DNA of 64,000 nt. Origin: Laetmonice hystrix (Eukaryota). Shown here piece by piece: positions 36,527 to 58,345 of the stretch. Below the pieces are notes generated by a model that saw only the letters and a program-made list of their open reading frames with translations, ran no database searches and was not told where the DNA came from. A program made the translations under genes and the position numbers. The stretch spans positions 12,772,001 to 12,836,000 of the forward strand of contig OZ249452.1 of assembly GCA_965235115.1 (NCBI GenBank), written 5' to 3'. The first letter of the stretch is position 1, and each line of letters opens with the position of its first letter.

Positions 36527-36654
36527 TCAGGAAACCATATTTTGATCCATTTTGGACACAATAATATATAGAAATATGTGGTTCTTAAACTTTGGGCAAA
36601 GTGACAGGGGCCAAAAGGACTCTGGATTAGGACAGGGCGAGCTGGGAAAGAATC
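36527..36654 (-). CDS. Candidate alternative (possibly terminal) exon: GFFPSSPCPNPESFWPLSLCPKFKNHIFLYIIVSKMDQNMVS*
   Basis: Strong acceptor (tttccttttcgtcttttctatgcag|GA) at 36655-56; phase-1 frame ends at TGA 36527-29. A GTGAGT donor at 36459-64 would instead suit a phase-0 frame, so the reading is ambiguous. Confidence 0.3.
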
Positions 36655-36866
36655 CTGCATAGAAAAGACGAAAAGGAAATGAGGACTACATAATTATATA
36701 CATAGATATCTACTCAGTATTTGAGCTTCAAAATAGACAGAATTTTATCCTCGAATAGAGCAAATATATCCAAAGCAAGTAAAATTTAGATAGCTCAGAT
36801 GTGAAAAGGAAGTATGTCATACTTTATGAAAGAGTTGTGAGCAAACAAGAAAGAGTTCAAGAACTA

Positions 36867-37818
36867 AAGGCCCGGTCCCACTGGGGAGAGGATTAATTGC
36901 GCATGAATTGAGTATACAAATTCGGGCATTCGTTGTCGTCCGCAACAAAATTGGCCAAAAATGACAAATTTCACAGTATGAATTACGGATATATTAAAAA
37001 TGTATAGCGAATAAAAAGCGAATGCGATTGCGGATGCTCTCCCATGAGGGATACAACTGGTAAATGTTGTCGAATGTATTGCGAACATTGTGGATATGTA
37101 TACGAACAATCACGGATGTATAACGCATGTATTAAGGAAACGGATCGGACGCATTGCGATTATCACGAAAGTATTACGGATGTATTGCGCACGTGTTGCG
37201 GAAACATCGGTTGTATTGCGCATGCGCGGCATCTGCATTGCGGTCATCACTCGGGCCTTTCAGCATCATTATTCATTATTCTCCACAGCTGCACTGGAAA
37301 TGACTGGCAAATATGTCGATTTCTGCCACATTTATATAGTACTTTGGGTTTACGGGTGTTATGTATTCGCAAATTGTTCCCAAATCAGATGCAAAGCAGG
37401 CGTAATACAAATGCTTTATTCGTGGCCAATCTGTATGCATTCGCTACAAATTATTTAAGTTCCTGATGTGGACGTGATAGGCATGCTATATATTCGTTTT
37501 ACATACTGTCCCAGTCCGCTGCCAAGCCGCAATACCCCGTCAGTTGCGGATATCAGCAGATAACAGCGGATATACAGCGCATAGATTCAGTATGTATTGA
37601 GTATGTATTGCGTATGTATTGCGTAACCAAAATTTTGTGCAGCTCAAAAATCCTGGCAACGGAAAAACGTGCCTTTGTGGATAAATGCGGACATGTGAGG
37701 ATGTCGGCCGACTCATACAAGCATGTTTCACGAATATTGCGGGTGTTTAGCGAATATAAACCAATTTTATGCGGAATTCATACGCAAATCTTCCTAAACA
37801 CCAGTGGGACCGGGCCTT
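36867..37818. mobile_element. Non-autonomous TIR DNA transposon (MITE-like, ~950 bp); superfamily uncertain
   Basis: Perfect 20-bp inverted match taaaggcccggtcccactgg (36865-84) / ccagtgggaccgggccttta (37801-20). The flanks read either as a TA duplication or as CTAA/TTAA. Further imperfect subterminal matches (gcgcatgaatt / aattcatacgc) and repeated GTATTGCG motifs; no transposase ORF. Confidence 0.85.
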
Positions 37819-39240
37819 TAATTCAAGTCATCGTTTGAGTCATCAGAAAGAATTATCAAATTTAAGCCTGATATTTATTCGGTAATTTCGAGCTTTCTGT
37901 TCTTATTGAGTAATATACTGGGTGATTTTGAATAGGCGTTGCTGAAAGAGAAGGCATTTATACTGGCGATGTCATGTGATCAGCAAGTGACGACTGATAA
38001 CGTTCCATTTTGAACACACAGGCTTTCAATATTAATTTTACTCAGTTTTTGAAACTAACTTTTTATTGAATAAAACCAAACTATGTGCAGATTCTTTATC
38101 TCTATCATAATCTGATAGATTTATACTATTAGCAATTTGTACAATATACGGCCACAACGTGCCAGCTGTTGGCTGTTAGCACCCATGCAATGTTTTCCGT
38201 GACTGAGGTGAAAATATCCAGAGATGATACTTTTATTATGGATTCTATAGCGAAAAGAGAAGCTAGAATAAACAAATATTCTAGACTCAGTGTTTCTGTC
38301 AGGTCAACCACCTGATATGTCATTGTCTTCAAATATCTTATAACGCCAAAGGAACCTCAGACTATGGTATTCATGCATGGGTGCTTATGATTTCCGTGTG
38401 CTTTAAATCAACACAATTGTTTTCTGTGAGAATGTTCTGCGTTTCACAGTTTGGTTATAATATGTCCTCTCAAACCAACACGATATTGTAAATCTAAACT
38501 GAGAAAACTAGTCCTAAAATCAAACTTTCTAACATTCATACGTCACTTGTGAACATTGTGGATCACGGAAACTAGCAATCTGGATAAAACGTGGACTCAA
38601 AAGCTAAATATTCAAAAATTATCTTCTACAAAAGATTTTCAATCTACAGAAAGGCCTGCATATCGAGAAAATAAGCTGACAGCATTTCCAAAAGAAAACA
38701 TATAAAAATTATTTTGTTGCCAAAATATACACACTGTAGTAAACAGCAGGTACTCTAAATAACACATTTCAACCGTTCTACTTTTGCTCAGCTTATTTCC
38801 CAATAGACAGGAGAGCAGGAAGACATTTTCTCTTCTATATGACTTCATACGGAACTGAACAAAGCAGCTACGCAGAAAATTTATAATATATCAAAATAAA
38901 GCCCTTCAAAAAACTTCAGTTTTACTGAAGCCAACTCAAGCCCCAGATTGCTGCTTCCAATAGTTGTGCAAGAAAAATATATTGATAAATATAAATCACC
39001 AGCCTGTCAAGTACAACCTTTTTGCATAATTATGAACTTCCGTAAACAACACTTTACACCACGGAATGTTGTCCAAAAGGATAGCAAGGTTAGGTATGGA
39101 TACTTCAGTCACGATTCCTTTTTGTTTCAATGAACTTAAATTACGCCAGGAGTGTTTCTGACAAGCTGATGTTGAAACGATGCACGCGTTATTTTCATCA
39201 TTATATGCTATATAAACAATAGTCCGAGAGATAAACACAC

Positions 39241-42200: not shown

Positions 42201-44115
42201 ACTACCTCCTCACCTGGGGTGCCCTCTGGTACTGTTTCCTTAATAACTACTGCCTCTTCTTTGATTACACTCTCTGTCATCTGAGAAACCTCCTCCGGAA
42301 CTGGTTCTGTGCGAGACTCTTTGTCAAAGATCTCGACAGGGATCTGTTCAGGGGCATGTTCTGGTTGCTTTGCAACAGATTCCCCAGGCAACTGTTCCGA
42401 GGGAGTTTCATCAGTATCAAGAACCACTCCGCTTGGGATCTCATCCATAAACTCAAAGGTCTCTTGTGGAATCCTGTCAGAGACTTCCACAAATTTATCT
42501 TCTTTCGGCTTGAGGACTTCCTCCACCACCTCTGAAACCTCTACCTCAGGAACATTATTTGGGGCATCCACTGGGACCTCCTCCGAAATCTCAATAGTTT
42601 GTGTTAAGATCCTCTCCGAAACTGTCCCCTTATATTTCTTTTCCTCCTCAACATCCTCTTTCTTGGGTGATTCCTCCTCAACTGTTTCAGAAAGACCTAC
42701 GGCCTTTTCCACCCCAACAGGCTCAACTACCTCAGAAACATTTTTGGGGACTTCCTCTGATAGTGTCTCCTTTTCTAGGATCTCAACGGGAGTCTGGACA
42801 GGAATGAGGTCTGGGCTCTTATTTATCGATTCCCCTGGGAGTTCCTCCTCTGGAGCTGATTCAACTTCTTCAATTTTATCAACAATTACTTCCTCAGTAA
42901 CTTCTGCTGTTTGCTCTACTGATCTATCAGCAACCTCTACCACTTTAGGAGCGACACTTGGAATCTCAACTACCTCAGTTTGTTCTGTAGAAACCTCAAG
43001 AGCTGATTCAACTTTATCAACAGTTACTTCCTCAGTAACTTCTGCTGTTTGCTCTACTGATCTATCAGCAACCTCTACCACTTTAGGAGCGACACTTGGA
43101 ATCTCAACTACCTCAGTTTGTTCTGTAGAAACCTCAACAACATCCTCAGCAGATTCTTCTAGAACAGCCTCAATGACTCCCTCAAAAGCTCTTTTAGTTT
43201 TGACTAACTCTAGAATTTCTTCTACGGTTTTCTCTTGAATGACTGTTTCTGAATACTCAACTACTACTTCTGATGAGATTTCCTCTTGCTTTTCAACCAC
43301 ATGCTTCAAGTCAACCTGCTGAGCTTCAACTTCTTCTGGGCGCTCTTCCGATAGAGTCTCAGAGACCCCTAGAACCTTTCCTTTCAGAATCTGCTCTATA
43401 ACCTCTGATGTCATTTCTGGGGTAAGCCCGGTGAAATCTTCTTTTTCTAAGAGATCAACTGGGGTTTTTTCTACAGTACGCATTGACATTTCATCAGTGA
43501 CCTGTTCCTGGCCCTCTTCTGATCCTAGCACAGGAACTTGGTCCAAAGGCTCATCATCTAATGGTTTATCTACTTTTTCAGAGACAAGAGTCTCAGTGTA
43601 AACCCTGCATGCTAGATCACGATAAGGTTCATCAATAAGCTCCTCAGAGATCGTTTCTGAGAATGTTTCGGGAGCTTCTTCAAAGACATCTTCATCCTCC
43701 TGCTCAACCTCTTCATCAACACGATGTGGTGCTGGAACCGGTGCTTCGACCATTGGAGCTGGCTCGGGTAGGATGAACTCTGAAATAGGCTCAGGTTCAG
43801 GTAAAATTAATTCTTCGTCTACTGGCGCAGGGACCTGGTACCACTCGGGCACATCTGGAATAGGACGCTCGGCGACAGGTTGTGGCTCCGGGATAATTGG
43901 CTCCTCATCAACTGGAACTGGAAGGTCGACTTCATCATAAAGCGATGAATCGGAGGTGTAGTCATCTGTTGTTAGATCTGTTTCCTCACCTTTAGTCTCC
44001 GTTTTTGCAACCTGCATTGTTGTTTCAGTTCGACTCATGGCAACCTCGGATTTCTCCACCTCGACTGTTGTCTTCGTGGTATAGGTCGTTTCTTCCATCG
44101 TTTCTGTGACCTCCT
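39241..44115 (-). CDS. Exon (4875 nt, phase 1-1): E/V/P-rich segment with degenerate ~46-aa repeats, ending in an Ig domain (~39242-39516)
   Basis: Acceptor acttgagcag|AG at 44116-17; donor G|GTGTGT at 39235-40; matches the 1700-aa ORF; VRLECCIFGEPAPKVTWY...DDEGEYICKASN. Confidence 0.9.
42875..43137 (-). repeat. Near-perfect 138-bp (46-aa) tandem duplication within the 4875-nt exon
   Basis: cttctgctgtttgctc at 42901 and 43039; EVSTEQTEVVEIPSVAPKVVEVADRSVEQTAEVTEEV occurs twice. Confidence 0.93.
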
Positions 44116-45458
44116 CTGCTCAAGTAAAAAAGTTTACTTAAAAGCATAGTGTCAGAAGCAGCATAAATAGGGAACACATTTGGTATCTATTAACATATAT
44201 GTATGTTGTAGAAAAGAAACACTGAAAAAAATAGTGAAATGTATAATTTCTGGTCTACAAGAGGACGAAATTGTCAGAAAATGAAATTGCGCGTACACAA
44301 ACATTGCGCCTTTTGGGGGATGAAACTTCACAACAGTTTTTCTATATTTTGTGTTCATTTGTTTTGGTTTTAGTTGCAGCTATAAAATAACGACTGTCCT
44401 TTGATGGGGGTCGATATAAATGTGTGTTTTGCATTGTTTTATGTATGTTGGAACCCATTTCACATTCACTCACACATTCAGAGCAATCACTCTTCTTTGA
44501 CGTTTTAGCTGGACCGAGTGGCAGCTAGGGATACTGAGCAGGATTAGATCAACCCTTTTAAGTAATGCAGCAACATACAAATCTTCAAGACAGAAAATTT
44601 GAAAAAGTCCATAACAAGTTTCTACCATATTTACATCTTTCTAGTGATACAATCGTGTACAAAATATAAACAAAGGGACATATAAATAGATAAATAAAAC
44701 CAAGGCTTTTCTTCACACGTTTGGCAGTCGTTTGTCAATAAGCTGCATGCTCCAACTAGGTTGAGATCACTGATCCAGACTCACGTTTCGTTCAGGTTCA
44801 TTATAAACTGATTGACATGTTTGAAGGTTCGTCTTCTCTCATAATATTTACATTTTTCAAAACCTGATCACATGCAGTAATTGGACTTGGCGGTGTAGAT
44901 TAAGATCCGGTGTTGGGTGCACGATTTGATGAGAATGGGAGATTCTGTCTTGCAGGGAGTCTGATGTATATGATGGTGTGTGATGGACATAACAACATCA
45001 ACTCTTCCACTACATTCACACAAGGTTACTTCCCACATCCTTTTGCTTCTGCATCCTTCATTCAGATAACAATGACATTTAACCACTTGTTCTTCTGAGG
45101 TGAAGAAAAATTCAAGCCCATGATTTTCTTGTTGCTTTTTCACCTTTTACATAAAATCCGTAGAAACATTTTGGTGCCTATGCCGACTGACATGTTCATA
45201 CTACATTTTGCTGGCCACAGACCAACCTCTAAAACATGCAAGGGGTCCTCAACTCTTTGCATACTTTTGATTGTACAACATAACACGTTGTAAGAAGCAG
45301 GTACAAAATTACAAAGTGTAATATACAAAACCATTCAAGTTGATTTTGTATATCATTTGTAACACTACACTCCAGGAATGAGAAACAAGTAAGGAAAAAA
45401 CAAAAAATCTGTGTTTTTTGTTTTGTTTCTTTGTGCTGATCAACGGTTGTAAACTTAC

Positions 45459-45519
45459 CCAGCAGTTACGCATCCAGTGTCAGTAAAAACTCGCAGGTTC
45501 ATGAAGAAGTCAAATCCTC
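45459..45519 (-). CDS. Possible 61-nt exon (phase 1-2; GFDFFMNLRVFTDTGCVTA)
   Basis: Acceptor gtgtag at 45520-21 and donor GG|GTAAGT at 45453-58. Only the phase-1 frame is open; the other two contain TGA. Confidence 0.3.
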
Positions 45520-45796
45520 CTACACGCATGCAGGTTTGAAGGCAAAAATCACCTTTCTAAAAAATGACAAACATGAACAACGGGGTACAACTAGAACAAG
45601 GAACATGCTTTCTGGCTTTTATTGTATTTACTAACTCGAAGATGGTTCACAGAATATTCATTTCATTTGTAATATCCCTGTAACATCTTCCGTGCATTTC
45701 ATGCTAAAGATCTCTAGTTCTCTCAACACATTCACAATGACACAATCGGTCCCAAGTAAAACTGATGCAATACTTCACGCCAAACAACCGCTACAA

Positions 45797-45942
45797 TTAT
45801 TTCCATGTTTTCATAACTAGAGAGACATGACTTCGATTGTTTCTGTGAAAAGCTGTAATAGAATGACATTTTGTTTTCAGCGACATGACAAGACCCCGAG
45901 ATACAGTATCACCGCGCTTGGAAAACAGTCCTTGTGGAACTG
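45797..45942 (-). CDS. Candidate alternative terminal exon: VPQGLFSKRGDTVSRGLVMSLKTKCHSITAFHRNNRSHVSLVMKTWK*
   Basis: Very strong acceptor (tttcttttttttaattttctatcctgcag|CAG, a NAGNAG) at 45943-44; open in phase 1 to TAA 45797-99; AATAAA on the minus strand at 45618-23. Confidence 0.35.
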
Positions 45943-47221
45943 CTGCAGGATAGAAAATTAAAAAAAAGAAATATATAAAAAAAAGTATCACAGAAATGAT
46001 GCTCTCAGGTTTCTGGATTATTTCATGACCAGTTTGTCCGGTATAAGGCGTACTTTGGGACCAAGTGTGCAGAAGTGAAGTGTGGATATACAGACAATAA
46101 GGTATTAATATTCAACTCCTGAATATTCAACACCATTCAGTCAAGTCAACACATTATCTACATATTAATGATGCAGATAACCTCATTGGTGTTACTCACA
46201 AAAGTGCATTTAGCAATGGTAGCCATACTGCAGGTATAGCTAGTGCATACTCAATCCATACTAGGCAAAATATACTTTAAACAAAAGTACACTGTTAAGT
46301 GTCCCTCTGCATTTACACCGTGACAATAGAAACAATAAATGGTACAGTACGGAACTAAATAATAAGCGTTGGTACATTTTGCTTAATGTTTATATAAAGA
46401 AAATCATGTTTTGGGACAAAGTAATATTTCAAAGAACTTAGATAAATACAAAATGCAAAGGTATGAGAACACATTTCTCTCTAGCTACATAATGCCTAGT
46501 GTGGATGTGGGTTTCGTTAGCGCCACCTTCAGGGAAACCATTGAACCATGCACATGATAACCAGCTGACATTTTGGCAGGTTTGGGGGAGCAGGATGCAC
46601 CGTCCTCAAAATAAAGCATTTCAACCCAATGCACAATATTACCAGCTTGTGGAATAGAAATATATAATAAATTCGGATAGATGGGAGTGAATAATAGAAG
46701 AGCAAATAATATACCGCTATACTATACCCTTGTTTTTCTGTCGTTTTCTAAGGCAGCCTGGCATTGCGTCAAGCCGTCGAACATATGCACCAAAATGAAC
46801 CTGTCTTACATGTAAAACTCTATGATTGGAAACAGCTATAATAACCCATCCTTTCAAAACGGGCATTATAGACTCCAGGTTCAGATAGGTTAATGGAAGA
46901 AGTGGTTATTTGTCATTAAAATCACTCTTTCCTGATGTACACTCTTTCTGAGTTACAACTAAGATTCAGGACTTTTATAGAGTTCAATCCACTTTTTATT
47001 TCAGGTAAAGCTCTCCGTACAAAACCTGAAGTCACACATCCAGACGTCCCCCAACCTTATGCTTAACTTTTGGACTAGTTTACACCATGGACGGATGTTT
47101 TATCAAAATGTATTGACACTTGTTAAGACGTGCTCCGCTCCATACCTCATACCTGCCAAACTGTACAATCTGGATTGTATTTTGCCACACAACTGAAAGT
47201 CTTCCCAAAACTGCCACTTAC

Positions 47222-47259
47222 AGCTACAACAAAGCAGTTTAAATGCACGACGAGGTTAT
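47222..47259 (-). CDS. Possible 38-nt micro-exon (phase 1-0; NLVVHLNCFVVA)
   Basis: Perfect donor GTAAGT (plus strand 47216-21) and possible acceptor ccacaag at 47260-61; open in phase 1. No partner phase-0 exon was confidently identified. Confidence 0.2.
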
Positions 47260-48033
47260 CTTGTGGTAACACGAGGTTTACACACAACAGTTTGAAACAT
47301 TTTTATTTGATGGCTTTGTACTGAAGGATCGGGGTCACATTACAAGGTTGGAAACATGACCGATTTTATCATTTACATAATTGGTTTAAAAAATATTTTG
47401 TAATCATTGTGGTTTCGTTAGTAGCAGTGAGCAGTTTTGAGCGGCCTTCTTACATTAGTGAGCAAGGAAACTTTACAACTGTATTCTAAGGCTTTTGTTA
47501 GAAGATTGCACACGACCACTAATGGTAATGATCACCATAGCATTCTCTTCATACGTCTCAAGGCACATAGCTGTGTCTATGGATAAACTGGTGACAACAA
47601 AATCTGGCTTGTTTGTAATTTCCAAGTCATGGAGATGACAGTTGCTGCATAGTGACCTGCAGCTTGAATGACACTGAAAGACTTTTACACCACTGCCATT
47701 CACATCGTAGCTTTCACACTCTAAAGTGTTTCACTCTTGTGACACAAGTGGCTATATATATCCCATTCATCACAAAAGAAATACAACCGTCTATGGGATT
47801 CTTCATGTTATAATGTATGTAGATGACGTTATGATCTTCAGATAACTCTACAAAATAACAGCGTATGAGTGTCAATAATAGGGAGTCCCGGCCACTGTGA
47901 AAAGACCCAAAGGAACTGCAAGCTTAGCGCTAGCGCCATCTACAAAACACAAAAACGCAGGCAAGCTCGTAAAACTGCAGCGTGTCGATGTGCCAGACTC
48001 AACGCTTTAACGCCAAGAGCTGAAATTTCCTCT

Positions 48034-48047
48034 GCGCCCTCTAGCTG
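48034..48047 (-). promoter_or_regulatory. CTCF-like motif (CAGCTAGAGGGCGC on the minus strand)
   Basis: Matches the CCASYAGRKGGCRS consensus at 12/14 positions; related cores at 46520-33, 47933-46 and 51197-207. Motif match only. Confidence 0.3.
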
Positions 48048-48509
48048 TCCAAGGGGTTCCACTGGGTCTGGGTGTGTGACTTCATAAACTGAGGCTTGGC
48101 ATTCGGGTTCACTTCCCACAACAGCCACTTTATCAGATTCTAAAAATCAAATAAACCGCCGCCACAATGTCAACAGCACATTTTTTTTTTTTTTTACAAT
48201 GGGAACAATAGCCTTGTCTCTCTAGAATGCGCTCATTGGGGTTTAAGGCCAAACTTGGCGGTAAACACTAGAGGGTCATCTAAGTATTCACCGACAGTTT
48301 CCCTGGATTTATAAAACCGGATTTCTTGAAATGGGCACAAGGACTGGGACACCACCTCAGTGGGTCGTTCCAGTTTTACCAAATTGTCCATATTCTAAAT
48401 CATGAGCACACTTTTTTCAATGAATACTTGAACACTAACCTTACTGCTATGGTTAGTAAACTTACTGCTTCTAAGCAACATGCATCATGGTTGCCTTCAG
48501 GACAAATTT

Positions 48510-49984
48510 GAGTTTGATGAGTGCTGTTGATGGTGGGAACCTGATCCAAGTTCACAATTCTTATTTGTCTGTACATAATGACTGTATTGCGCAAAGCATC
48601 ATGGGACCCATGAAGTCAATTTCCCTACTCAGACTACATAGATTAACAAATACATAATTTTACAAACAAAAGGTGTTCAGAACACAATGTGACTAATAAT
48701 CAACACAAACCAATACAGCTTCCAGTGCAGGTGCAGGGTCAACAAGACAACAGAAATGGGGAAACCAATTTCAGATGCCAAAAATAGCATCAGATAGACT
48801 TCAAAAGAAAGAAAACAGAACGAGTTGAAAAGTAATTAATACAGTTCCCACCTCCATTTCTTCTCTCCCTCTGTGTCCCATGATGCTTTGCTACAGGAAG
48901 TGACCTACTCCTCTAAATTGATTCATTTTTTTCTTCACAGATCAAGGCAGCCATTTTGAGACAACAATACGCAGCACAGTGTACTTGTCACAAGGGAGGA
49001 CCAATCAGATGATTTGTATCTGATAGATCCAAAACCAATCAAGATCTTTGTTTCAGATTGGTGAAACAGAAATGGTCATACAGCCCTGGTCTAGGTAATG
49101 CAGTGAAACTTTGAGATTTTTTTTGGTGCAAGTTAATATGGTTCAAAACTGTTTCCATTCTTCATCAATGATTTTTTCAGAGCTCAGAAAACAAACAAAC
49201 ATATCAAAAAGCTAAACTACCTTGGATCCTCCGCCCTTTTAACACAACATATGAAGAACTGGAGACCTAATGCCACCACAATAACCTCCTTTTTCATGAT
49301 TTGAGATATCAAAGTACACAGACTGGTAACATGAGACACCATCTTTTCTTCTTTTTTTTTGTTTTTTTTCTATAAACTTCAGTCTGGGGCCATCTTTGAG
49401 AAATGCTTCTCCGTTTGCGAGGCGTCATGTTACCAGTGGCACCTAGACCAGGGCAGAAAAGCTACTTGAGGACCATCTAGAAAGTCATCCCTCCAAAAAG
49501 TATCGAAGGGACTGGGTGACGGGGAAGCACCCAGCGAATCAGGACGCACAATTATTGCAAGGAAAACAATTTCTTGGGACAAAGTACACATGAGCAAGAA
49601 ACTTCACACTGCTGACGAAACATGACGGCACGAAATAATTAAACAATCAATGAGATCAGGCGGAATACATCTGATAACAAGCCGGTGACCAATAACCACC
49701 AAGCTGCCAAGAATTTTCAGCAATAACAAAAAAAGGGGACATAAATGCATAAAGGACAAATTCACCAGATAATAATTTAGTACAAAATGGCTGCCACATA
49801 ATCTGCACCCTGATTGGCTACGACTACTGCTACGCTGGATAAATGTGCAATTCTAGACTTGAGCTCAGCAAATGGAGGATGGCAGTTGAGCTTGTTTGGA
49901 AGACGGTCGCCACTTGACGAATATCTCAATCTCAACATCATAGAATTCCTCTAGAATCACTTGCTCAACAGCACTCATCAGCTC
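48510..49984 (-). other. Nested inverted repeats predicting a branched pre-mRNA secondary structure
   Basis: Exact reverse-complement pairs: 48515-30/49965-80 (16 bp), 48591-607/48875-91 (17), 48946-58/49783-95 (13), 49083-96/49441-54 (14) and 49322-34/49425-37 (13). Also imperfect 48979-94/49573-89. All are non-crossing. Confidence 0.7.
49865..49983 (-). CDS. Candidate alternative terminal exon: (K)LMSAVEQVILEEFYDVEIEIFVKWRPSSKQAQLPSSIC*
   Basis: Acceptor ttttctgtgttcag|AG at 49984-85 with a pyrimidine-rich tract upstream. Open in phase 1, which matches the upstream donor at 51310. E/V-rich, ends at TGA 49865-67, and no strong internal donor was seen. Confidence 0.5.
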
Positions 49985-51310
49985 TGAACACAGAAAATAA
50001 TCATAGAGTCAGTTCTAAAGAGTGTGGAGACAAGAGAGAAAAGCAGAATGACAAAGAATGACGACGATTCTGTTTTAACCAATAAGAACAACAAAATTAC
50101 TTCAGTGCTGAATAAGCAGTGTTGTTGTCATGGTGATGCAAGATATATGCCAATCACAGTGCAGCGAATCATGTGCTGCAGAACAAGAAGTCCAAGATTT
50201 TCCTCCAATCATCTGATCTTATAGAGGGTCAGTGCATGGAGCCCCAGAGCTGAATTCTGATGACATTTTCCATTACACCAGAAAACAGGTCTGATAAACT
50301 TCCAGCTTCAAGATTTAGGGTAGGAACGTACTTAGTATTCTTGCTCTGCAGAGAATGCATGTATAAAAAAATTGAGGTGACTGGCAGCATGATATTACAT
50401 ATTACAGGTCCCATATTCAGTGAGCACCATGTATATAAGAGGTAGGACAAGAGGTTAACAATACAATGCCTCACAGATACATAGCACCATGGTTTACGTT
50501 TTCTTGTCTAGCCTACTTTAACATATGAAAAAAATGGCCTGAGTATACACATTTACATATGCACATTTAATATTATTCTCTTTGGTCAGTCTACTTTATT
50601 TCAATAATATCACACTCTGAAAAAACATCTGATTAAATCCAGAATATCATTGTATAAATTTAGACCAATATTCAGGAACTCCAGAAGCTATCTAAATTGA
50701 CTTGGTGAAGGGGAAATGAGGATGATACTAAACAAAGCAATAACAAAATACAATGACCAAGAGGGCAAGGGGTGTTTTGGGTGCTGGCAGTGTCTGAGAA
50801 CTAGATCACACATAAACTAGGTCACGCAAGAACTACGTCACACCGCTGACCTTTCTGGAGCAATTTGTCCGATTTGATGATACCACCTCACACAAATAGT
50901 TTCATTCGACACAACTACATAACAACGCGCCAAAACCATCACACTGAAATTATCGGTCTCCTAAAAGCAATCTCCGCCAAAACCATTTTTTTTTGTTAAC
51001 AAATGAAAATAAACAAAACCAGAACTTTCCTTTTAGCCATTTCCCAGCAAAGGGGAAGAATACGAAGAGAACTGAATATTGACTGATAAAGAAAACAGAA
51101 AACACAAATTTGGTTGTCTGATTGATCATCAGTTATGTTGTCCACAGCTATCTGCGCTCATACATTGTGTACAAACTACAGTCCAAACACAAAAGAGCCA
51201 CCTAGTGAGTAACAAGAGTATCAGGGGTACTCTTATCTAGAAACATCGACTAGCGAAGCACTTCTGGTATACATGCTCTACTCTCGACAATACGGGCAAC
51301 AGTCGCTTAC

Positions 51311-51476
51311 TTTCAACAAGTAGCTCAGCCATAGTGGTTGCGACACCAGCTTCGTTCTTGGCCTCGCACATATATTCAGCTTCATCTTCGATGGAAACCT
51401 TGTCGATGCGAAGGATACAACGGCCTTGTTTGTATTCCAGGACTGTGTGTTCTGTGCTACTGATCTTCTTGCCGTC
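51311..51476 (-). CDS. Exon (166 nt, phase 0-1): second half of the Ig domain (DGKKISSTEH...EDEAEYMCEAKNEAGVATTMAELLVE); not in ORF track
   Basis: Acceptor ccctgtag|GAC at 51477-78; donor A|GTAAGC at 51305-10; completes the Ig domain begun in the previous exon. Confidence 0.9.
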
Positions 51477-51787
51477 CTACAGGGGGCAGCACAGCAGTCA
51501 AACACAATTTAATAAATGATCTTCATTGTAATATTAATATAATTTTACTGGGACAAATTTAAAAAGTGAATTCTACTTTTAATTCTGATTGCCTTCAAAT
51601 TAGTATTACAAAACTGACATTCATAGCTTTTCATAGTAAAAATTAACGTTTACCAGAAGTAGGGAAACAGTAGTTTCTCTACTGTAGCACCTCTCAAAAA
51701 TCCTCTCAAAAATTTTTCCTTAACCCCTACTCCCCAATTATCGTGTGAATGTTACCATGGAGATAACCACCTTACACAGTAACTCAC

Positions 51788-51921
51788 CTGGTACCACGTG
51801 ATTTCTGGAGTAGGATGTCCCGTAACACGGCATTCAAGCGTGACAGGCATCGTCTCAAAGATTTCCTTGTGCTCCAGATTCCTGGTGAAACGAGGTGCTT
51901 CTGGTTGCTCAGGCATTTGCA
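51788..51921 (-). CDS. Exon (134 nt, phase 1-0): first half of an Ig domain (APRFTRNLEHKEIFETMPVTLECRVTGHPTPEITWYQ); not in ORF track
   Basis: Acceptor tttcctag|TG at 51922-23; donor CAG|GTGAGT at 51782-87; I-set motifs read by hand translation. Confidence 0.9.
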
Positions 51922-52121
51922 CTAGGAAAGAAAAAATAATACTGGTTTTTATTTGCTGTTATAGTAGATGGAGGGTTATTTACAGGTGAAACTTAACCTA
52001 GCTTAATAAGCTTCATTTTAAATTACTGCATCGTTTGTACCTATTTCTATGGCACAGTTATAATAAAGGAATTTCAACATTTTAAATATACATGTAGGCC
52101 CGTCGAGAAATCAGTACTTAC

Positions 52122-52271
52122 TTTCTATGACAGTGACCTCTTTCTTTAACTGCAAGGCCATGTCTACCTCGACCTTCTTAAATTGTTCAAATACTTCCTC
52201 TTCAGGTTTCTTTCCAGTTGGTTTGGCTGGGACACCTTCGATGGGGGACTCTGACAAAGGCCTTGACGGAG
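52122..52271 (-). CDS. Exon (150 nt, phase 1-1): PSRPLSESPIEGVPAKPTGKKPEEEVFEQFKKVEVDMALQLKKEVTVIE; not in ORF track
   Basis: Acceptor ttccaacag|CT at 52272-73; donor A|GTAAGT at 52116-21; open in phase 1 with PEVK-like composition. Confidence 0.85.
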
Positions 52272-52549
52272 CTGTTGGAACAAAATCCGGTCAAATCACC
52301 AATATGCATTCCTTTCCTTGGGCAACTCTTGGCAATATCTTTCTCAAGTTTCTGCTAAATTTGAAATTTACCGACCTTAAAATGCTGAAACTTGTGTATC
52401 AAGCGAAACTGAAATTTTAATTCCCTTTCTGTACATGTACCAGTAATCAGATAAAGCCTTGTGTAAATAAACCAGGATTACGATCTAAGGAAAAAGGCAG
52501 TTATTTTTGCCATATGCTTGAGCCTGAGATTAAAGGCTTTGGTACTTAC

Positions 52550-55500
52550 GGAGTACAGACAGGTAAGCAGTGGTGATGCATGTTCCAGCATCATTGACAG
52601 CTTTCACGGAGTACTCTCCCTCGTTTCCAGGCATGACGTCTAGGATACTCATCCTACAGACGCCTTCCTCGTACGTGATCTCCACGTCCTTGGTGGCCTT
52701 GATCATGCGACCCTCCACGTACCACGTCACGGTCGGCATTGGGACGCCGTTGATGCGGCACTCGAAGACGGCCTTTTCGCCTTCAAAGATGGTGATGTCT
52801 GAGAGTGGGAGCTCAAACACCGGAGCCATCAACTGCCTGGCGGATACCTCCGTCACTTGCGTAACTTCCTGGACGGTTTCCGAGACTTCAGGTTTCTTGA
52901 TCACCTCAATCTGTTCGGAGGTGAATTCAGTGATGACCTGTTTTTCCTCGGTCACCTCCTGCGCAGTGCGGACTATCTGCTCGGTCTTGATGGCTTCTAG
53001 CAGTTCAATTTCCTTTCTGGATAGTTTGGGTGAGACCTTTTCAATCGAAATGTCAATATGTTGTTCTGCAGCCGCTTCCACAGTCATAATTACCTTTTGA
53101 GTTTGAGTTTGGAACTCCTTGGTATCCTTCTTAGCTTTCCTAAGGCTCTCGGTCTCTTCTGTGGAGGCAACCTCTGCTTCCTCTAAAAAATGATGCTCCT
53201 GGTCAGTTGTAGTTTCTTCATCTGTTATTGTTGGCCGCACATGTGATTCTAAACGGTAGCGTTCAATGACTGCGCCCTCGTAGGATGGACGGACAACAGA
53301 TGGAATCATCCAAACCTCTTTAATGTGAGCGACATATTCCTGGGCAATGTCCTCCGGTGGATGTGATTCAGCAACAGGCTCAACACGGGTTTCGGGTTTG
53401 TCTCCCTCCTCTGGAGCCTGCAGCAGTACAATAACATCCTCCTGGGCTGGAATCTCCTCGGAGTATCCAGACACGTCTTCTTTGGTCATGCAAACATCAA
53501 CGAGCTCTTCATACGTCTCAACATGGGATGGTTTCGGGGACCCTCTATCAGCGACCTCTAGTGCGACCTCGACTGCACTCTGGGTGGTCGTTTCCTGGGT
53601 AACTGTGTCCGCGGGTAACTCCTCTGTGACCTGGGGCGTGGTCAACTTCTCTTGAAGAGCCACCATAGAAGGACGTCGTTCCTTCTTCTTGGCTGTTTCC
53701 AGGGGGACTACCACTGCCTCTGGTTTAGTCTCGGTGACTTCAAATTCAATGTGGGCCTCCTCAGTTATCTCGATATGCTGCACTTCCTCCTGTGTTGGCA
53801 CAAGTGTCTGTGCCTTATCCTGGACTGCAGGGGTTGAGAGGTCTACTCTGACCTCTTCCCCTGGAATTTCAGGTTCAGGAGCCTCAAAGAACATGTCTTC
53901 TTCTTCCTCCTCTGAATGTCGCTCTTCTGTAAGGTCTACATGTGCTTCCCTTGTGTCCTGTACCATGGGTTGGTCGTACATGCTCACTATCTCTTCTTTC
54001 TGTGGTGCCATGCTCTCTAGGGCGGCAAGATCGCTCTCAATTTCGCCCTCGGATAGAACCTCATCTTGAGGAAGAGCATGACTGACACGTGCACCCTCCA
54101 CCTGTGGTTTGGACAGGTCGACCGTGATCTGTTGCTCCATTGACACCTCTGGTGATGGCATTCTCTCGAGTAAATCATAGATTGTCTCCTCTGGCAGTCT
54201 TTCTTCCTGCGTCTGAACAAGACTCTCGCGGGCAGCCTCCACCACTTTCTGACCCATTTCAACCTGGACCTCTTGCCCATCAGTTGTTTCCGTGGTGATG
54301 TCCTCCACGAGTTCATGGGCCACGTCTTCAGCGAAAGCCTCGATCTGAGTCAGGACATGTGATTCTGTGACTGGTTCAACAGATGATTGACCTAGATCTA
54401 CAGTTACTTCTGTTGGGTGTGTTTCAATATCAGGGACCGGAGATATACGATCAGTGCCTTCCTCAGTGATTTCCTCTTGGACAGTTTCTACGCGAGTTTC
54501 CGTTGCCTCCTCTTTGAGGGGCTGGCTAAGCTCTACGAAGGTCTCCTGTTGTTGGGTGGCCTCAGTCGTTGTCTCCTTGACAGCTTCAGTGATCTGTTCC
54601 ACTCCAATCTTCTCTTCCATTGCTTCCACACGCATTGGGAGCCCAGCAGGTTCTGGAGCCTGGACCATGTGCACCACTATGTCCTCTTGCTGTGAGACTT
54701 CAGTGGGAACAGCAGCAACCTCCTCTGTGATCTCAGATGACACCTGTTCGGCAACTACTCCAACCCTTGACACCAGTTTCTCCTCTGCAGTTGTTTTAAC
54801 GAGGTGTACGATTATCTGTTCTTCTTGTGGGACCTCGGTGGGTACCTCAGCTACCTCTTCAGTAATTTCTGGAGTGACTTGCTCATCAACAGCTTGAACA
54901 TGGGTTTCCCTCTTCTGTTCTGCCATTGGCTGTGCAAGGGTTATGAAGATCTGTTCCTCCTGTGGGACTTCAGTGGGCATTTCAGCAACCTCTTCCGTGA
55001 TCTCTTCTACTACGGTTTCATCCACAGCTTCAACACGCGATTCCTTCTTCTGTTCAGCAGTGGGTTTAACAAGAGTCACAAATATTTGCTGCTCTTGTGG
55101 GAGCTCACTTGGGACCTCAGCAACCTCTTCAGTCACCTCTGTTGTTATCTGCTCTGCAACGGTTTCCACTCGGGACACCATTTTCTCTTCAGCAGTTGTT
55201 TTAGCCAAGTGGACAACAATCTCTTGTTCTTGTGGGACTTCAGTGGGAACCTCAGCCACTTCCTCTACGAGTTCAGGACTCAAGCGCTCAGCAACAGCTT
55301 CAACACGTGTCTCTGTCTTTTGTTCAGCAGTTGGTTTTACCAGTTGCACAAAGATTTGTTGTTCTTGAGGAAGTTCAGTCGGAATTTCTGCGACCTCCTG
55401 GGTGACCTCTTCGGTGACTTTTTCAGCAACAACTTCAACCCGTGATTCCATGGTAGGCTGGGCAGTTGGTTGTTTCAACTCCACAACAATTTCTTGTTGT

Positions 55501-58345
55501 TGAGGAACTTCGGAGGCTTCAATGAATACCTCTTCAGTCATTTCTTCTGTGACCTTCTCTTCAACTGCTTCTACCCGAGACTCCATTGTTGGCTGGGCAG
55601 TTGGTTGTTTCAGTTCTACAATGATTTCTTCCTTTTGTGGAGATTCAGGAGCTTCAACAAAGACCTCTTCAGTGACTTCCTCTGTAACACTTTCTACAAC
55701 AGCTTCGACCCGAGATTCCATTGTAGGCTGGGATTTCGGTTGCCTGAGTTCAACAACGATCTCTTGCTGTTGTGGAACCTCTGATGTTTCTGCAAATACC
55801 TCTTCTGTGACTTCTTCCGTGACTTTTTCCACCACTGCTTCTACACGAGATTCCATTGTAGGTTTAGCTGTTGGCTGCCTGAGATCAACAATGATCTCCT
55901 GTTTCTGTGGGACTTCAGAGGGCTGAATGAAGACTTCTTCCGTGACTTCTTCTGCCACTCTTTCAACCACTGCTTCAACACGGGATTCCATTGTAGGTTT
56001 AGCTGTTGGCTGTCTGAGATCAACAATGATCTCCTGTTTCTGAGGGACTTCAGAGGGCTGAATGAAGACTTCTTCAGTGACTTCTTCTGCCACTCTTTCA
56101 ACCACTGCTTCAACACGGGATTCCATTGTAGGTTTAGCTGTTGGCTGTCTGAGATCAACAATAATTTCTTGTTTCTGTGGAACTTCAGAGGGCTGAATGA
56201 AGACTTCTTCAGTGACTTCTTCTGCCACTCTTTCAACCACTGCTTCAACACGGGATTCCATTGTAGGTTTAGCTGTTGGCTGCCTGAGATCAACAATGAT
56301 CTCCTGTTTCTGTGGGACTTCAGAGGGCTGAATGAAGACTTCTTCCGTGACTTCTTCTGCCACTCTTTCAACCACTGCTTCAACACGGGATTCCATTGTA
56401 GGTTTAGCTGTTGGCTGTCTGAGATCAACAATGATTTCTTGTTTCTGTGGGACTTCAGAGGGCTGAATGAAGACTTCTTCGGTGACTTCTTCTACCACCT
56501 TTTCAACCACTGCTTCAACACGGGATTCCATTGTAGGTTTAGCTGTTGGCTGTCTGAGATCAACAATGATTTCTTGTTTCTGTGGAACTTCAGAGGGCTG
56601 AATGAAGACTTCTTCAGTGACTTCTTCTGCCACTCTTTCAACCACTGCTTCAACACGGGATTCCATTGTAGGTTTAGCTGTTGGTTGCTTGAGTTCAACG
56701 ACGATCTCCTGTTTCTGTGGCACTTCAGAGGGCTGAATGAAGACTTCTTCAGTGACTTCTTCAGTCACCTTTTCCACAACTGCCTCCACACGGGACTCCA
56801 TTGTTGGTGCCGCCTTGGGTTGTCGCAGTTCGACAATGATCTCCTGGGTCTGAGGTACTTCAGGAATCTCATGAGTAACCTCAGAGATCTCCTCAGTAAC
56901 CATCCGTTCCTCAACTGCCTGGACTCTTGTTGTTGGCTTCTCTTTAGGTTTGGCTTGTTTGAACTCAACCTTGATCTCCTGTTGCTGGGTCGTTTCTTCA
57001 GCAGTTCTGATGACTTCCTCGTATACCTCCTCCCGTACTGCAGTTTGCTGAACCAGGGCCTTCATTTCAGTTGGTAGGGTGACGGATGCCACCTTCACCT
57101 GCTTCGGGGAAACTTGTCGCGGCGCAGGGATTTCCATGCTGACGTCGGAGATGATCTCCTGGGTGATTTCCTCCTGTTCCATCTCCTCCTGGGGGAAGGC
57201 CTGCTTGGGGATCTGCCACTTCACATCTGCCATCTGCACAGTCTCCTCCGTGAACTCCTCTGTCATCTCAACCTCCTCCTCTTCCACGTGCTCCTCCTGA
57301 ATGTCCTGCCGCAGTTTCTCCATCTTGGCAATAAAGGCAGATGTCCTCTCGAGGAACTCTGCCTCATCTTCACTGATCACCCGCTCCTGCTCTGACATTT
57401 CTGCCTGGGATGCAGATGCCTCCTCGGAATCAGGGACGTACTCATAGACATCCACCTTGAGGAAGGCCGAGGTGATTGCAGTGCCGTAAGGGTTGACCGC
57501 AATGCACTGGTATTCTCCATTGTCTTGTGGGAAGACCTCCATGATGTTCAGAACACACTCGCCAGTTTTCCTGTTGTAGGATGTCTGGAAGTCAGGATTG
57601 TCTTCCACTGGCTTGTTGTTACGATACCACGTGATCTCTGGCATGGGGTTACCCGTGACAATACATCTGAAGGTAACCTCTTCACCATCCATGCAGTTAA
57701 TAGAGTCAAGTTCAAAGGTGAATTTTGGCGGAGCTCCATCAAGTTGAATCTTCAACATCTGCCGCTGAGTCTCAATGGCCTCAACGCGCTTTTTCTGGAG
57801 GATGTCCAGACGGGATGTCTCCTTCTTCTGCTCTGCAATCTCCACCTCCATCTTGACACCTCGGAGGGCAGCAAGCTGTTTGAACTCGATGAAGGACTTC
57901 TCAATCCTCTTCTCTGGCAGCCTAAACTGCACTTCCATTTCTTTCATTTTGGCATGGTGGTCAATCGCAACCGTTTCTGAGAAGCGACGCTGTTGCACCA
58001 AAGGTATGGTTAGTGCCTGTCGTTTTGTAACTTGAGCCTCTACTTGTTTCTTCAGTTGGGTGAGTGTTAACGTAGATTCCACAGTCTTTGGTGGTTGGAC
58101 TTCAACACTCAACTTCATTCCCTTTGGTAAAGAATCCCTTCGAGTGAAGAATTCAGCTCGTTGTGGTTTCTTCTCCGGGATTTTGAAGTGGAACTGATAC
58201 TCCTTTGGTTTGCTGTGGTGATCAATGGAGAGAGTTTCGCTGAAACTGCCGGATGATCTCACATAAACTGGCTTCTGAGTGCGCACGACCTGGACAGTGC
58301 GACTTACAATCTTCTCTGTATCCTCATCTGATGACGACGATGGCA
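52550..58345 (-). CDS. Exon (5796 nt, phase 1-1): duplicated 87-aa basic module, Ig (~57450-57735), 45-aa repeat array, acidic linker, Ig (~52550-52825)
   Basis: Acceptor attccag|TG at 58346-47; donor C|GTAAGT at 52544-49; matches the 1938-aa ORF. Confidence 0.93.
54600..56960 (-). repeat. Coding tandem repeat, 135 bp / 45 aa (ESRVEAVVERVAEEVTEEVFIQPSEVPQKQEIIVDLRQPTAKPTM); ~7 near-identical core units with degenerate flanks
   Basis: cgggattccattgtagg at 55981, 56116 and 56521 (multiples of 135); divergence increases toward both edges. Confidence 0.9.
57725..58245 (-). repeat. Diverged 87-aa (261-bp) tandem duplication, K/R-rich
   Basis: FSETLSIDHHSKPKE...KRQALTIPL versus FSETVAIDHHAKMKE...QRQMLKIQL; the FSE codons are 261 bp apart. 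Confidence 0.8.

What the first reader, a model, noticed from the sequence alone, without database searches (positions are those of the whole stretch)
49865..49985. Outer helix A pairs directly with the first bases of a candidate terminal exon
Seen: the 16-bp arm at 49965-80 is exon nt +4 to +19 of the phase-1 exon that starts at 49983. After a 1x2 internal loop, pairing extends 3 bp (GAG 49984-82 with CUC 48512-10) over the acceptor G itself. The partner lies 1.45 kb downstream in the transcript, and the nested helices B-F would bring the two arms together. Inference: co-transcriptional folding masks the 3' splice site, so Pol II speed or RNA-binding proteins could toggle between a short isoform ending ...LPSSIC* and read-through to >12,000 further codons (docking/selector-like logic).
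Basis: partly seen in the sequence, partly recalled or inferred. Interest (0 to 1): 0.8.

Follow-up and report, generated by a model that had tools for sequence, protein, structure and literature searches.

The report
Conserved RNA helix masking alternative last-exon acceptor
A giant titin-like muscle gene carries a real, evolutionarily conserved "early stop" exon whose first bases pair with its own 3' UTR 1.45 kb downstream, and this pairing has co-evolved in several species, so it probably helps decide between a short and a giant protein.

Summary
Bases 49980-49965 (exon +4..+19, minus strand) are perfectly complementary to 48530-48515. A 3-bp extension reaches the acceptor G. Four further perfect 13-17-bp helices nest inside; no dinucleotide shuffle of the intron gave such a cluster (0/3000).

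The "candidate" exon is real. Orthologues occur in nine loci from environmental assemblies. Two spliced transcripts (L001, L009) join the preceding Ig exon to it, stop after 36-41 codons and run on for at least 1.4 kb.

The helix partner is not in a separate intron. It lies in the exon's own roughly 3-kb 3' UTR, which ends at an AATAAA (47000) just after a second conserved long-range helix, H2.

Pairing of the exon start with the distal UTR recurs in L010 (with G.U pairs), L009 and L003 (three compensatory pairs each). It is degenerate in L001 and L005.

A direct copy of the exon box (48179-48170, also in L005) can compete for the 3' arm, and the two folds are predicted isoenergetic.

Best reading: a long-range RNA structure controls choice of an alternative last exon, as in Drosophila Nmnat. 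The direction of the effect, and use of the exon in this species, are untested.

The parts
51311..51476 (-). Second half of an Ig (I-set) domain. This is the common upstream exon. Its phase-1 donor (GTAAGC at 51310) feeds either acceptor.
   Evidence: Sequence. Aligns to the spliced transcripts L001 1973-2138 and L009 579-744.
49984..49985 (-). Proximal acceptor AG behind a pyrimidine-rich tract. G49984 is paired in the helix A extension.
   Evidence: The AG|A(G/A)CTN acceptor context is conserved in the genomic loci L002, L003, L006, L007, L008 and L010.
49865..49983 (-). Coding part of the alternative last exon (K + 38 codons + stop at 49867-49865).
   Evidence: Peptide conserved in nine other loci (alignment A1). 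Seen spliced to the Ig exon in L001 and L009.
46975..49983 (-). Inferred full terminal exon (about 3.0 kb: coding part plus 3' UTR). The 3' end at about 46975 is inferred, not observed.
   Evidence: L001 and L009 transcripts run at least 1.4-1.6 kb past the stop. AATAAA follows the H2 3' arm by 28-83 nt in the window, L002, L005 and L010.
49965..49980 (-). Helix A 5' arm (exon +4..+19; codons for M-S-A-V-E).
   Evidence: Bare duplex dG -26.6 kcal/mol.
48515..48530 (-). Helix A 3' arm ('docking' box), 61 nt after the H1 3' arm. CUC at 48512-48510 extends it over the acceptor G.
   Evidence: A homologous box sits at the syntenic place in L010, and degenerate versions in L001 and L005.
48170..48179 (-). 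Decoy box: a direct copy of exon +10..+19. It can pair with 48530-48521 in place of the exon start.
   Evidence: The same 11-mer lies just upstream of H2 in L005.
48875..48891 (-). H1 hairpin 5' arm.
   Evidence: Conserved in the window, L001, L005 and L010 with a 258-271-nt loop. Present in the RNAalifold consensus.
48591..48607 (-). H1 hairpin 3' arm.
49783..49795 (-). Nested helix 5' arm (13 bp), pairs with 48958-48946. Seen only in the window.
48946..48958 (-). Nested helix 3' arm (13 bp).
49441..49454 (-). Nested helix 5' arm (14 bp, plus one G.U), pairs with 49096-49083.
49083..49096 (-). Nested helix 3' arm (14 bp).
49425..49437 (-). Innermost nested helix 5' arm (13 bp), pairs with 49334-49322.
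49322..49334 (-). Innermost nested helix 3' arm (13 bp).
48066..48084 (-). H2 long-range helix 5' arm: 11-12-bp conserved core plus a 6-bp extension.
   Evidence: Core found in the window, L002, L005, L009 and L010. The extension covaries.
47027..47045 (-). H2 3' arm. The loop is 1034 nt.
46995..47000 (-). AATAAA, the presumed poly(A) signal of the short isoform, 28 nt after the H2 3' arm.
44115..44117 (-). Distal acceptor AG (44117-44116) and first base of the next large exon (phase 1), leading into more than 12,000 codons.

Best explanation
The locus is an alternative last exon of an invertebrate titin/sallimus-like gene. The phase-1 donor at 51311 can splice to the proximal acceptor (49983). 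That gives a truncated protein ending in a conserved peptide of about 38 residues, with a roughly 3-kb 3' UTR polyadenylated near 46975. Alternatively it splices to the distal acceptor (44115) and continues into the giant isoform.

The terminal exon carries a conserved set of long-range RNA helices. Helix A joins the acceptor G and exon bases +4..+19 to a box 1.45 kb downstream. H1 is a hairpin with a 270-nt loop. H2 closes about 1 kb of UTR just before the poly(A) signal.

Most likely helix A forms once Pol II has transcribed about 1.45 kb beyond the acceptor. It then occludes the AG and the first exon bases, which closes the time window for choosing the short isoform and favours the distal acceptor. 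A downstream decoy copy of the exon box can take over the 3' arm and free the acceptor again, so the element behaves as a two-state switch.

Shown: the sequences, their conservation and covariation, exon use in relatives, and the predicted energetics. Inferred: that the effect is on splice choice, that it is repressive, and that the exon is alternative in this species.
For: - Perfect 16-bp helix plus nested helices far beyond chance.
- Exon conserved in nine loci and spliced in two transcripts.
- The exon start pairs with its own downstream sequence better than shuffled queries do: window (0/200 with intron bases, 2/150 exon only), L010 (dG -39.6, 0/150) and L009 (dG -25.7, 0/150).
- The L010 partner is homologous and syntenic, 60-90 nt after H1. 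It pairs through three G.U wobbles, which work only on the sense strand, and its helix also covers the intronic AG.
- L009 and L003 have different codons at +5, +8, +9 and +10, with matching changes in their UTR boxes: G:C to A:U, G:C to C:G, A:U to G:C.
- An exact 8-nt complement of a species' own exon +3..+11 occurs downstream in 4 of 7 species, against 3 of 42 cross-species pairings and 0 of 7 in three sequence controls.
- H2 core identical in five species with a covarying extension, always 28-83 nt before AATAAA. H1 conserved in four species inside otherwise unalignable UTR.
- Decoy conserved in the window and L005. The helix A and decoy folds differ by 0.4 kcal/mol in a 3-kb fold. In growing-transcript folds helix A is present from +1480 to +2000 and lost by +2400.
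- Experimental precedent: the Drosophila Nmnat stem around the proximal acceptor of an alternative terminal exon (PMC2724269).
Against: - No expression data exist for this species, so use of 49983 and of the 51311-to-44115 junction is inferred.
- The helix covers the AG and exon start but not the polypyrimidine tract or branch point.
- Both arms lie in the same exon, so a post-splicing role or an exon-definition role fits equally well.
- Pairing is not better than shuffles in L001, L002, L003 and L005.
- In L009 and L002 the best partner lies inside the H2 loop, unlike in the window and L010.
- Partners in L009 and L003 were picked as best matches, so their homology is not proven.
- MFE differences of under 1 kcal in 3-kb folds are within model error.
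- The three innermost nested helices were seen only in the window.
Confidence: 0.5

Rival explanations
1. The same conserved helices work the other way. Helix A and H2 together fold away about 2.5 kb of the 3-kb terminal exon and bring the proximal acceptor within a few hundred nucleotides of the poly(A) signal. This helps terminal-exon definition and promotes the short isoform.
For: H2 ends 28-83 nt before AATAAA in four species. Helix A starts at the acceptor. With both formed, only about 430 nt of linear spacer remains in the window (48515 to 48084) and about 160 nt in L010. The polypyrimidine tract and branch region stay unpaired in helix A.
Against: The AG itself and the first 19 exon bases are inside the duplex, which usually hinders acceptor recognition. 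In the Nmnat case the stem favours the distal acceptor. No data show that the 3'ss and poly(A) site cooperate here.
Confidence: 0.2
2. The structure acts in the mature short mRNA, not in splicing. A compacted 3' UTR with CDS-UTR pairing could control translation, decay, localisation or dsRNA-binding proteins such as Staufen or ADAR.
For: Both arms, H1 and H2 are retained in the spliced transcripts of relatives: L001 contains H1 and L009 contains H2. The whole UTR is rich in conserved helices.
Against: Ribosomes would open helix A on every pass, because its 5' arm is coding. In the genomic loci (window, L010) the pairing continues into intronic bases including the AG, which the mRNA lacks. The L005/L006 overlap shows no A-to-G differences, although both contigs may be RNA.
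Confidence: 0.15
3. There is no switch. The exon at 49983 is the constitutive last exon of one gene, and the ORFs from 44098 downstream belong to a separate downstream titin-like gene that starts at the ATG at 44098.
For: An in-frame ATG with an A at -3 and a G at +4 lies 17 nt inside the downstream exon. About 2.9 kb separates the poly(A) signal from that exon. No transcript spanning 51311 to 44115 was found.
Against: The downstream exon opens directly behind a good acceptor and in phase 1, matching the donor, in the window, L010 and L003. L010 has no ATG near the start of that exon. The ORFs on both sides share the same protein architecture. Giant titin genes are known to have internal alternative terminal exons.
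Confidence: 0.1
4. The inverted repeats are a DNA-level by-product with no RNA function: a decayed palindrome, nested transposons with terminal inverted repeats, or chance.
For: All five window helices are perfect Watson-Crick pairs, which gives no strand information by itself. Three of them were not found in other species.
Against: There is no similarity between the boxes and no target-site duplications. The arms are unique in the window. No shuffle reproduced the cluster (0/3000). Both arms of A, H1 and H2 are conserved across species inside unalignable sequence, with G.U pairs and compensatory changes.
Confidence: 0.05

Closest known systems
Drosophila Nmnat intron 4 stem (Raker et al. 2009, PMC2724269; later miR-1002/MIMOSAS work, PMC13092977)
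   Same: A long-range stem is associated with the proximal acceptor of an alternative terminal exon that has its own poly(A) signal. [quoted passage not shown] The distal acceptor leads to an internal exon and a different C-terminus. The boxes are conserved across species.
   Different: Here the 5' box is the acceptor G plus coding bases +4..+19, not an intronic box upstream of the acceptor. The span is 1.45 kb. A second conserved helix (H2) sits next to the poly(A) signal, and a decoy copy of the exon box exists. The gene is a giant muscle protein. No mutational test has been done.
Dscam1 / 14-3-3zeta type docking-site and selector-sequence competition
   Same: One box (48530-48515) can pair with either of two sequence-related partners, the exon start or the decoy at 48179-48170, in mutually exclusive helices.
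   Different: There is no cluster of mutually exclusive cassette exons and no series of selectors. The choice is between two acceptors and 3' ends, not among exon variants.
Short titin isoforms from internal terminal exons: vertebrate novex-3 (Nx3) and Drosophila Kettin (short sls isoform) (PMC13649281, PMC11081514)
   Same: A giant Ig-rich elastic muscle protein gene has an internal alternative 3' end that yields a much shorter isoform.
   Different: No sequence similarity of the terminal peptide to either was shown, and Pfam finds nothing. Regulation of novex-3 or Kettin termination by long-range RNA pairing is not described in the papers read here.
Conserved complementary regions (PCCRs) in human pre-mRNAs (Kalmykova et al. 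2021, PMC8052449)
   Same: These are conserved long-range pairs that loop out exons, including an alternative terminal exon (FGFR1OP2), and are linked to poly(A) site usage.
   Different: Those pairs are intronic and were detected genome-wide. Here one arm is coding and abuts the acceptor, and the system lies inside a single terminal exon.

Membership tests
Long-range RNA structure controlling an alternative terminal exon (Nmnat type) | Two complementary boxes hundreds of nucleotides or more apart on the sense strand of the pre-mRNA | tested here: met
   16/16 bp, 1434 nt between the arms. The G.U pairs in L010 work only on the sense strand.
Long-range RNA structure controlling an alternative terminal exon (Nmnat type) | The boxes involve the proximal acceptor of a terminal exon with its own poly(A) signal, and a competing distal acceptor exists | tested here: met
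   The 5' arm is +4..+19 and its extension covers the AG. The conserved AATAAA is at 47000. The phase-matched distal acceptor is at 44115. Usage is inferred from the orthologous transcripts L001 and L009.
Long-range RNA structure controlling an alternative terminal exon (Nmnat type) | Pairing conserved across species with compensatory substitutions | tested here: met
   Helix A recurs in L010, L009 and L003 with changes on both sides. Own versus cross-species complement test: 4/7 versus 3/42. The helix is degenerate in L001 and L005.
Long-range RNA structure controlling an alternative terminal exon (Nmnat type) | Breaking the stem shifts splice choice and compensatory mutations restore it | not testable with these tools
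   This needs a minigene or genome edits.
Dscam-type docking/selector system | A cluster of mutually exclusive exon variants, each with its own selector that pairs to one docking site | tested here: not met
   Only one exon exists. The only other partner is a single decoy copy in the UTR.
Dscam-type docking/selector system | Mutually exclusive alternative helices that share one arm | tested here: inconclusive
   The 3' arm can pair with the exon start (-26.6 kcal/mol) or the decoy (-14.9 kcal/mol). The global folds differ by 0.4 kcal/mol. This is prediction only.
Titin / sallimus / connectin-like giant muscle protein | Repeated I-set Ig domains separated by long E/V/P/K-rich disordered stretches encoded by very large exons | tested here: met
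   Pfam I-set hits at E values of 1e-19 to 1e-43 in ORFs of 1046, 1938 and 1700 aa. ORFs of 5105 and 1775 aa have no domains. The nearest named relatives are called titin-like, titin homolog or unc-89.
Titin / sallimus / connectin-like giant muscle protein | Fibronectin-III super-repeats and a C-terminal kinase domain | not tested
   Neither was seen in the ORFs scanned. The ends of the gene lie outside the window.
ADAR editing-site complementary sequence (exon-ECS duplex) | A-to-G differences between RNA and genome within the duplex | tested here: inconclusive
   L005 and L006 are the same species and their 123-nt overlap is identical. Both contigs may be RNA-derived. There is no matched DNA and RNA for the window species.
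Transposon with terminal inverted repeats (MITE-like) | Terminal inverted repeats flanked by a target-site duplication, with multiple copies in the genome | tested here: not met
   None of the five pairs has a target-site duplication. The arms occur once each in the window. The rest of the genome could not be searched.

The most novel reading that the evidence does not exclude
A three-box, co-transcriptional RNA timer sets the ratio of a short (novex-3/Kettin-like) isoform to the giant isoform of an invertebrate titin. The three boxes are the exon-start box at the acceptor, a docking box 1.45 kb downstream, and a decoy copy 350 nt further on. They are scaffolded by conserved helices H1 and H2 next to the poly(A) signal. 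The codons of the exon's first residues co-evolve with the UTR to preserve the switch across distant species.
Probability: 0.25. Interest if true: 0.75.

Novelty: new member of a known kind. Interest (0 to 1): 0.6.

Why it matters
How giant sarcomeric genes choose between truncated and full-length isoforms (novex-3 in vertebrates, Kettin in flies) is poorly understood. Here the choice point carries a sequence-defined, evolutionarily supported RNA structure. It can be tested directly with arm mutations and compensatory mutations, antisense oligos and structure probing. It is also a clean example of coding bases at a splice acceptor co-evolving with a distal 3' UTR box. Finally, it shows that a terminal exon's own UTR can hold the regulatory partner, which annotation pipelines that look only at introns would miss.

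Tried and rejected
- Decayed palindrome: rejected. The segments between the boxes align no better than shuffles.
- Nested transposons: rejected. There are no target-site duplications and the arms are unique.
- Known RNA family: none in 44000-52600 at E <= 1.
- Known protein domain in the terminal peptide, or in small ORFs of the intron: none.
- The search for homologous proteins: the 300-aa exon end, the P0018 tail and the 1700-aa downstream ORF gave no orthologues. Only the all-against-all representative search and the metagenome scan did.
- My first inverted-repeat null was inflated by self-overlapping palindromes. It was redone with non-overlapping arms.
- RNAduplex with queries or targets of more than 100 nt gives long meaningless duplexes.
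- The longest run of WC plus G.U pairs does not discriminate from shuffles.
- A helix bracketing the exon (50164-50149 / 49818-49803) was not found in L010 or L003, so it is not part of the core model.
- The organism could not be identified from accession searches or cluster names.
- The count of structure pairs was not used for helix A or H2, because the arms are more than 700 nt apart and the structure string would be very long. Pair tables were computed in scripts instead.
Full report
**1.

On the minus strand, 49980-49965 is the exact reverse complement of 48530-48515. After a 1x2 internal loop (C49981 against A48514/A48513), G49982-A49983-G49984 pair with C48512-U48511-C48510. The helix therefore reaches the G of the acceptor AG (49985-49984). 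RNAduplex finds an alternative extension that pairs UUCAG (-5..-1) with CUGAA after an 11-nt bulge.

Four more perfect helices lie inside helix A and are mutually compatible:
- 49795-49783 / 48958-48946 (13 bp)
- 49454-49441 / 49096-49083 (14 bp)
- 49437-49425 / 49334-49322 (13 bp)
- 48891-48875 / 48607-48591 (17 bp)

All five are in the MFE of 48500-49995 (-427.4 kcal/mol).

The 64-kb window has only six such repeats of >=13 nt with non-overlapping arms within 1.5 kb, and five are here. In 3000 dinucleotide shuffles of the intron the mean was 0.24. No shuffle put three or more in one 1.5-kb span, and 0.6% had an arm >=16 nt.

The sequence between the boxes is not palindromic (z about 0). No pair has target-site duplications. 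The arms occur nowhere else in the window. Rfam has no match.

**2. The gene**

The minus strand carries very large ORFs of 1046, 1938, 1700, 5105, 3592 and 1775 aa. They contain I-set Ig domains separated by long E/V/P/K-rich disordered sequence. Distant named relatives are called titin-like, titin homolog or unc-89. This is an invertebrate titin/sallimus-like gene. The organism could not be identified.

Small exons follow the 1938-aa exon. The last one, 51476-51311, is the second half of an Ig domain and ends with a phase-1 donor. The 7.2-kb interval down to the acceptor at 44117-44116 contains the finding.

**3. The candidate exon is real**

An exhaustive profile search with the end of the 1938-aa exon found P0018. 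P0018 is encoded by an uninterrupted ORF on a 3.7-kb metatranscriptome contig, L001. It runs through the orthologues of all the small exons without introns. It continues ...LLVE-K-LVSAVEQLMLEEFYEVEI... to a stop.

tblastn and a metagenome scan then found the exon in:
- L002, L003 and L010 (genomic)
- L006, L007 and L008 (genomic, upstream part only)
- L005 (same species as L006, identical 123-nt overlap)
- L009, a second spliced transcript (...SELLVE-K-LINAVEQ...)

. All have the acceptor context AG|A(G/A)CTN. All share a conserved core, L-x-x-x-x-EQ-x-x-x-EE-(F/Y)(Y/F)-(D/E/Q)-(V/I)-EI-x-x-x-x-KW. All reach a stop within 32-48 codons after the junction lysine. Pfam does not know the peptide.

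**4. Extent of the exon, and where the partner lies**

L001 continues 1445 nt past its stop and L009 continues 1637 nt. A second long-range helix, H2, has an identical 11-nt core in the window (48083-48073 / 47038-47028), L002, L005, L009 and L010. Its loops span 713-1709 nt. The stem next to the core changes on both sides between species. For example, the window has CCAGAC:GTCTGG where L009 has CCAAAG:CTTTGG.

An AATAAA follows the H2 3' arm by 28 nt in the window (47000), 83 nt in L002, 40 nt in L005 and 45 nt in L010. L009 ends 22 nt after the arm. The terminal exon is therefore about 3 kb (49983 to about 46975).

The helix A partner is in the exon's own 3' UTR. It is intronic only with respect to the long isoform.

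**5. Is helix A selected?**

The 17-bp hairpin H1 is conserved in the window, L001, L005 and L010, with a loop of 258-271 nt, although the loop itself does not align.

At 50-90 nt after the H1 3' arm, all four species have a related box. It is the helix A 3' arm in the window. L010 has a version with four changes. L001 and L005 have degenerate versions.

In L010 the exon start pairs with that box at dG -39.6 kcal/mol (0/150 shuffled queries as good, z -4.9). The helix uses three G.U wobbles and one A-C mismatch within +4..+19. It continues over the intronic AG. G.U pairs would be A-C mismatches on the other strand, so the structure belongs to the sense RNA.

L009 has different codons (CTA ATC AAT instead of CTG ATG AGT). 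Its UTR holds exact complements of its own version at +1514 and +1620. This gives G:C to A:U, G:C to C:G and G:C to A:U relative to the window (dG -25.7, 0/150, z -4.2).

L003 (CTG ATC GAC) has an exact 8-nt complement at +1195 and a 7-nt one 27 nt later. This again implies three two-sided changes.

Across seven species, an exact 8-nt complement of a species' own exon +3..+11 occurs downstream in four. The figure is 3 of 42 for cross-species pairings. It is 0 of 7 for each of the reversed, complement-only and direct controls.

Against this, the best duplexes of L001, L002, L003 and L005 are no better than shuffles in energy. In L009 and L002 the partner lies inside the H2 loop rather than before it. 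The three inner nested helices were seen only in the window.

**6. A competitor**

Folding the whole terminal exon (-20..+3010) gives an MFE in which the 3' arm pairs with 48179-48170 instead of the exon start. That site is a direct 10-nt copy of exon +10..+19. The same 11-mer lies just upstream of H2 in L005, next to a conserved GGTTCCC:GGGAACC-type helix.

Forcing helix A costs only 0.4 kcal/mol (-858.2 against -858.6). The bare duplexes are -26.6 kcal/mol (helix A) and -14.9 kcal/mol (decoy).

In MFEs of growing transcripts, the exon start first pairs weakly with intron -45..-28. Helix A then forms completely from +1480 to +2000. It is replaced by the decoy fold at +2400 and beyond. These are model predictions with differences inside the error of the energy model. 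They show that two states are plausible, not that they occur.

**7. Is there a long isoform?**

The next exon opens directly behind a good acceptor and in phase 1, matching the donor, in the window (44115), L010 and L003. L010 has no ATG near the start of that exon. Read-through is therefore likely. No transcript across that junction was found, and an in-frame ATG at 44098 leaves a two-gene model open (rated 0.1).

**8. Mechanism**

The best-supported reading is that a conserved long-range RNA structure governs the choice of an alternative last exon. I favour occlusion of the proximal acceptor (0.5) for three reasons. The AG and the first exon bases are inside the duplex. The pairing extends into intronic bases in genomic loci. 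The closest tested precedent, Drosophila Nmnat, works this way: breaking the stem reduced distal-acceptor use and a compensatory stem restored it (PMC2724269).

The main rival (0.2) is that helix A plus H2 bring the acceptor and the poly(A) signal together and promote definition of a 3-kb terminal exon. A role confined to the mature mRNA (0.15) is possible, because both arms stay in the mRNA. It does not explain pairing to intronic bases, and ribosomes would unwind a coding arm.

**9. Comparison and novelty**

The system works like the Nmnat stem and like exon-looping conserved complementary regions in human genes (PMC8052449). It is not a Dscam-type docking/selector array.

The short-isoform logic parallels novex-3 and Kettin, but no homology of the terminal peptide to either was shown.

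Four things are new:
- the gene context
- a coding 5' arm that abuts the acceptor and co-evolves with a UTR box
- the H2 helix next to the poly(A) signal
- the conserved decoy

I class it as a new member of a known kind, of moderate to high interest because it is directly testable.

**10. Limits**

There are no expression data for the window species and the organism is unknown. Only seven loci have downstream sequence, and they are too diverged for a phylogeny-aware covariation test. Partner sites in L009 and L003 were identified as best matches. All structures are predictions.

Noticed in passing
window 36861-36884 and 37801-37824: A 24-nt, 96% complementary inverted repeat (20 nt perfect), with 916 nt between the arms, lies in the next intron downstream (35326-38995). 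It is the only other long inverted repeat in the window. It could be another long-range helix or a transposon relic. The 140-aa plus-strand ORF between the arms has no Pfam hit.
   Followed up: partly
window 55433-56808: A tandem array of 10.2 copies of a 135-nt (45-aa) unit, 87% matches, lies inside the 1938-aa exon. It is a recently expanded PEVK-like repeat. The related fragment P0022 (L004) lacks most of it.
   Followed up: partly
window 50149-50164 and 49803-49818 (also 49533-49548): A 16-nt helix (14 Watson-Crick pairs, one G.U, one mismatch) brackets the acceptor and the whole coding part of the terminal exon (-181 to +181), which is the Nmnat-like geometry. Its 3' arm has an alternative partner at 49548-49533. 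L002 has a comparable bracketing pair. L010 and L003 do not.
   Followed up: partly
window 48465 and 48444 (minus strand): Two strong donor-like sites (GCA|GTAAGT and GCA|GTAAGG) lie 50-70 nt after the helix A 3' arm, inside the presumed 3' UTR. They could mark a UTR intron or an alternative cassette form of the exon.
   Followed up: no
window 48181-48195 (minus strand): A run of 15 A lies immediately upstream of the decoy box, and a second A-rich stretch is near 49350-49375. Both could cause internal oligo-dT priming artefacts in 3'-end data for this exon.
   Followed up: no
L001 2176-2192/3654-3670; L003 2911-2934/4700-4723; L010 4768-4787/7224-7243: In three relatives the codons for EE(F/Y)(Y/F)E(I/V)E, about +37..+50 of the exon, are 79-82% complementary to a site 1.5-2.4 kb downstream. 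An own-complement 8-mer for this exon segment is found in four species. This may be a second exon-UTR helix, or a composition effect of AT- and purine-rich sequence.
   Followed up: partly
L002 17084-17101 and 17214-17231: In L002 the best partner of the exon start (about +1690..+1733) is also 89% complementary over 18 nt to a nearby upstream site. This is another possible competing local hairpin.
   Followed up: no
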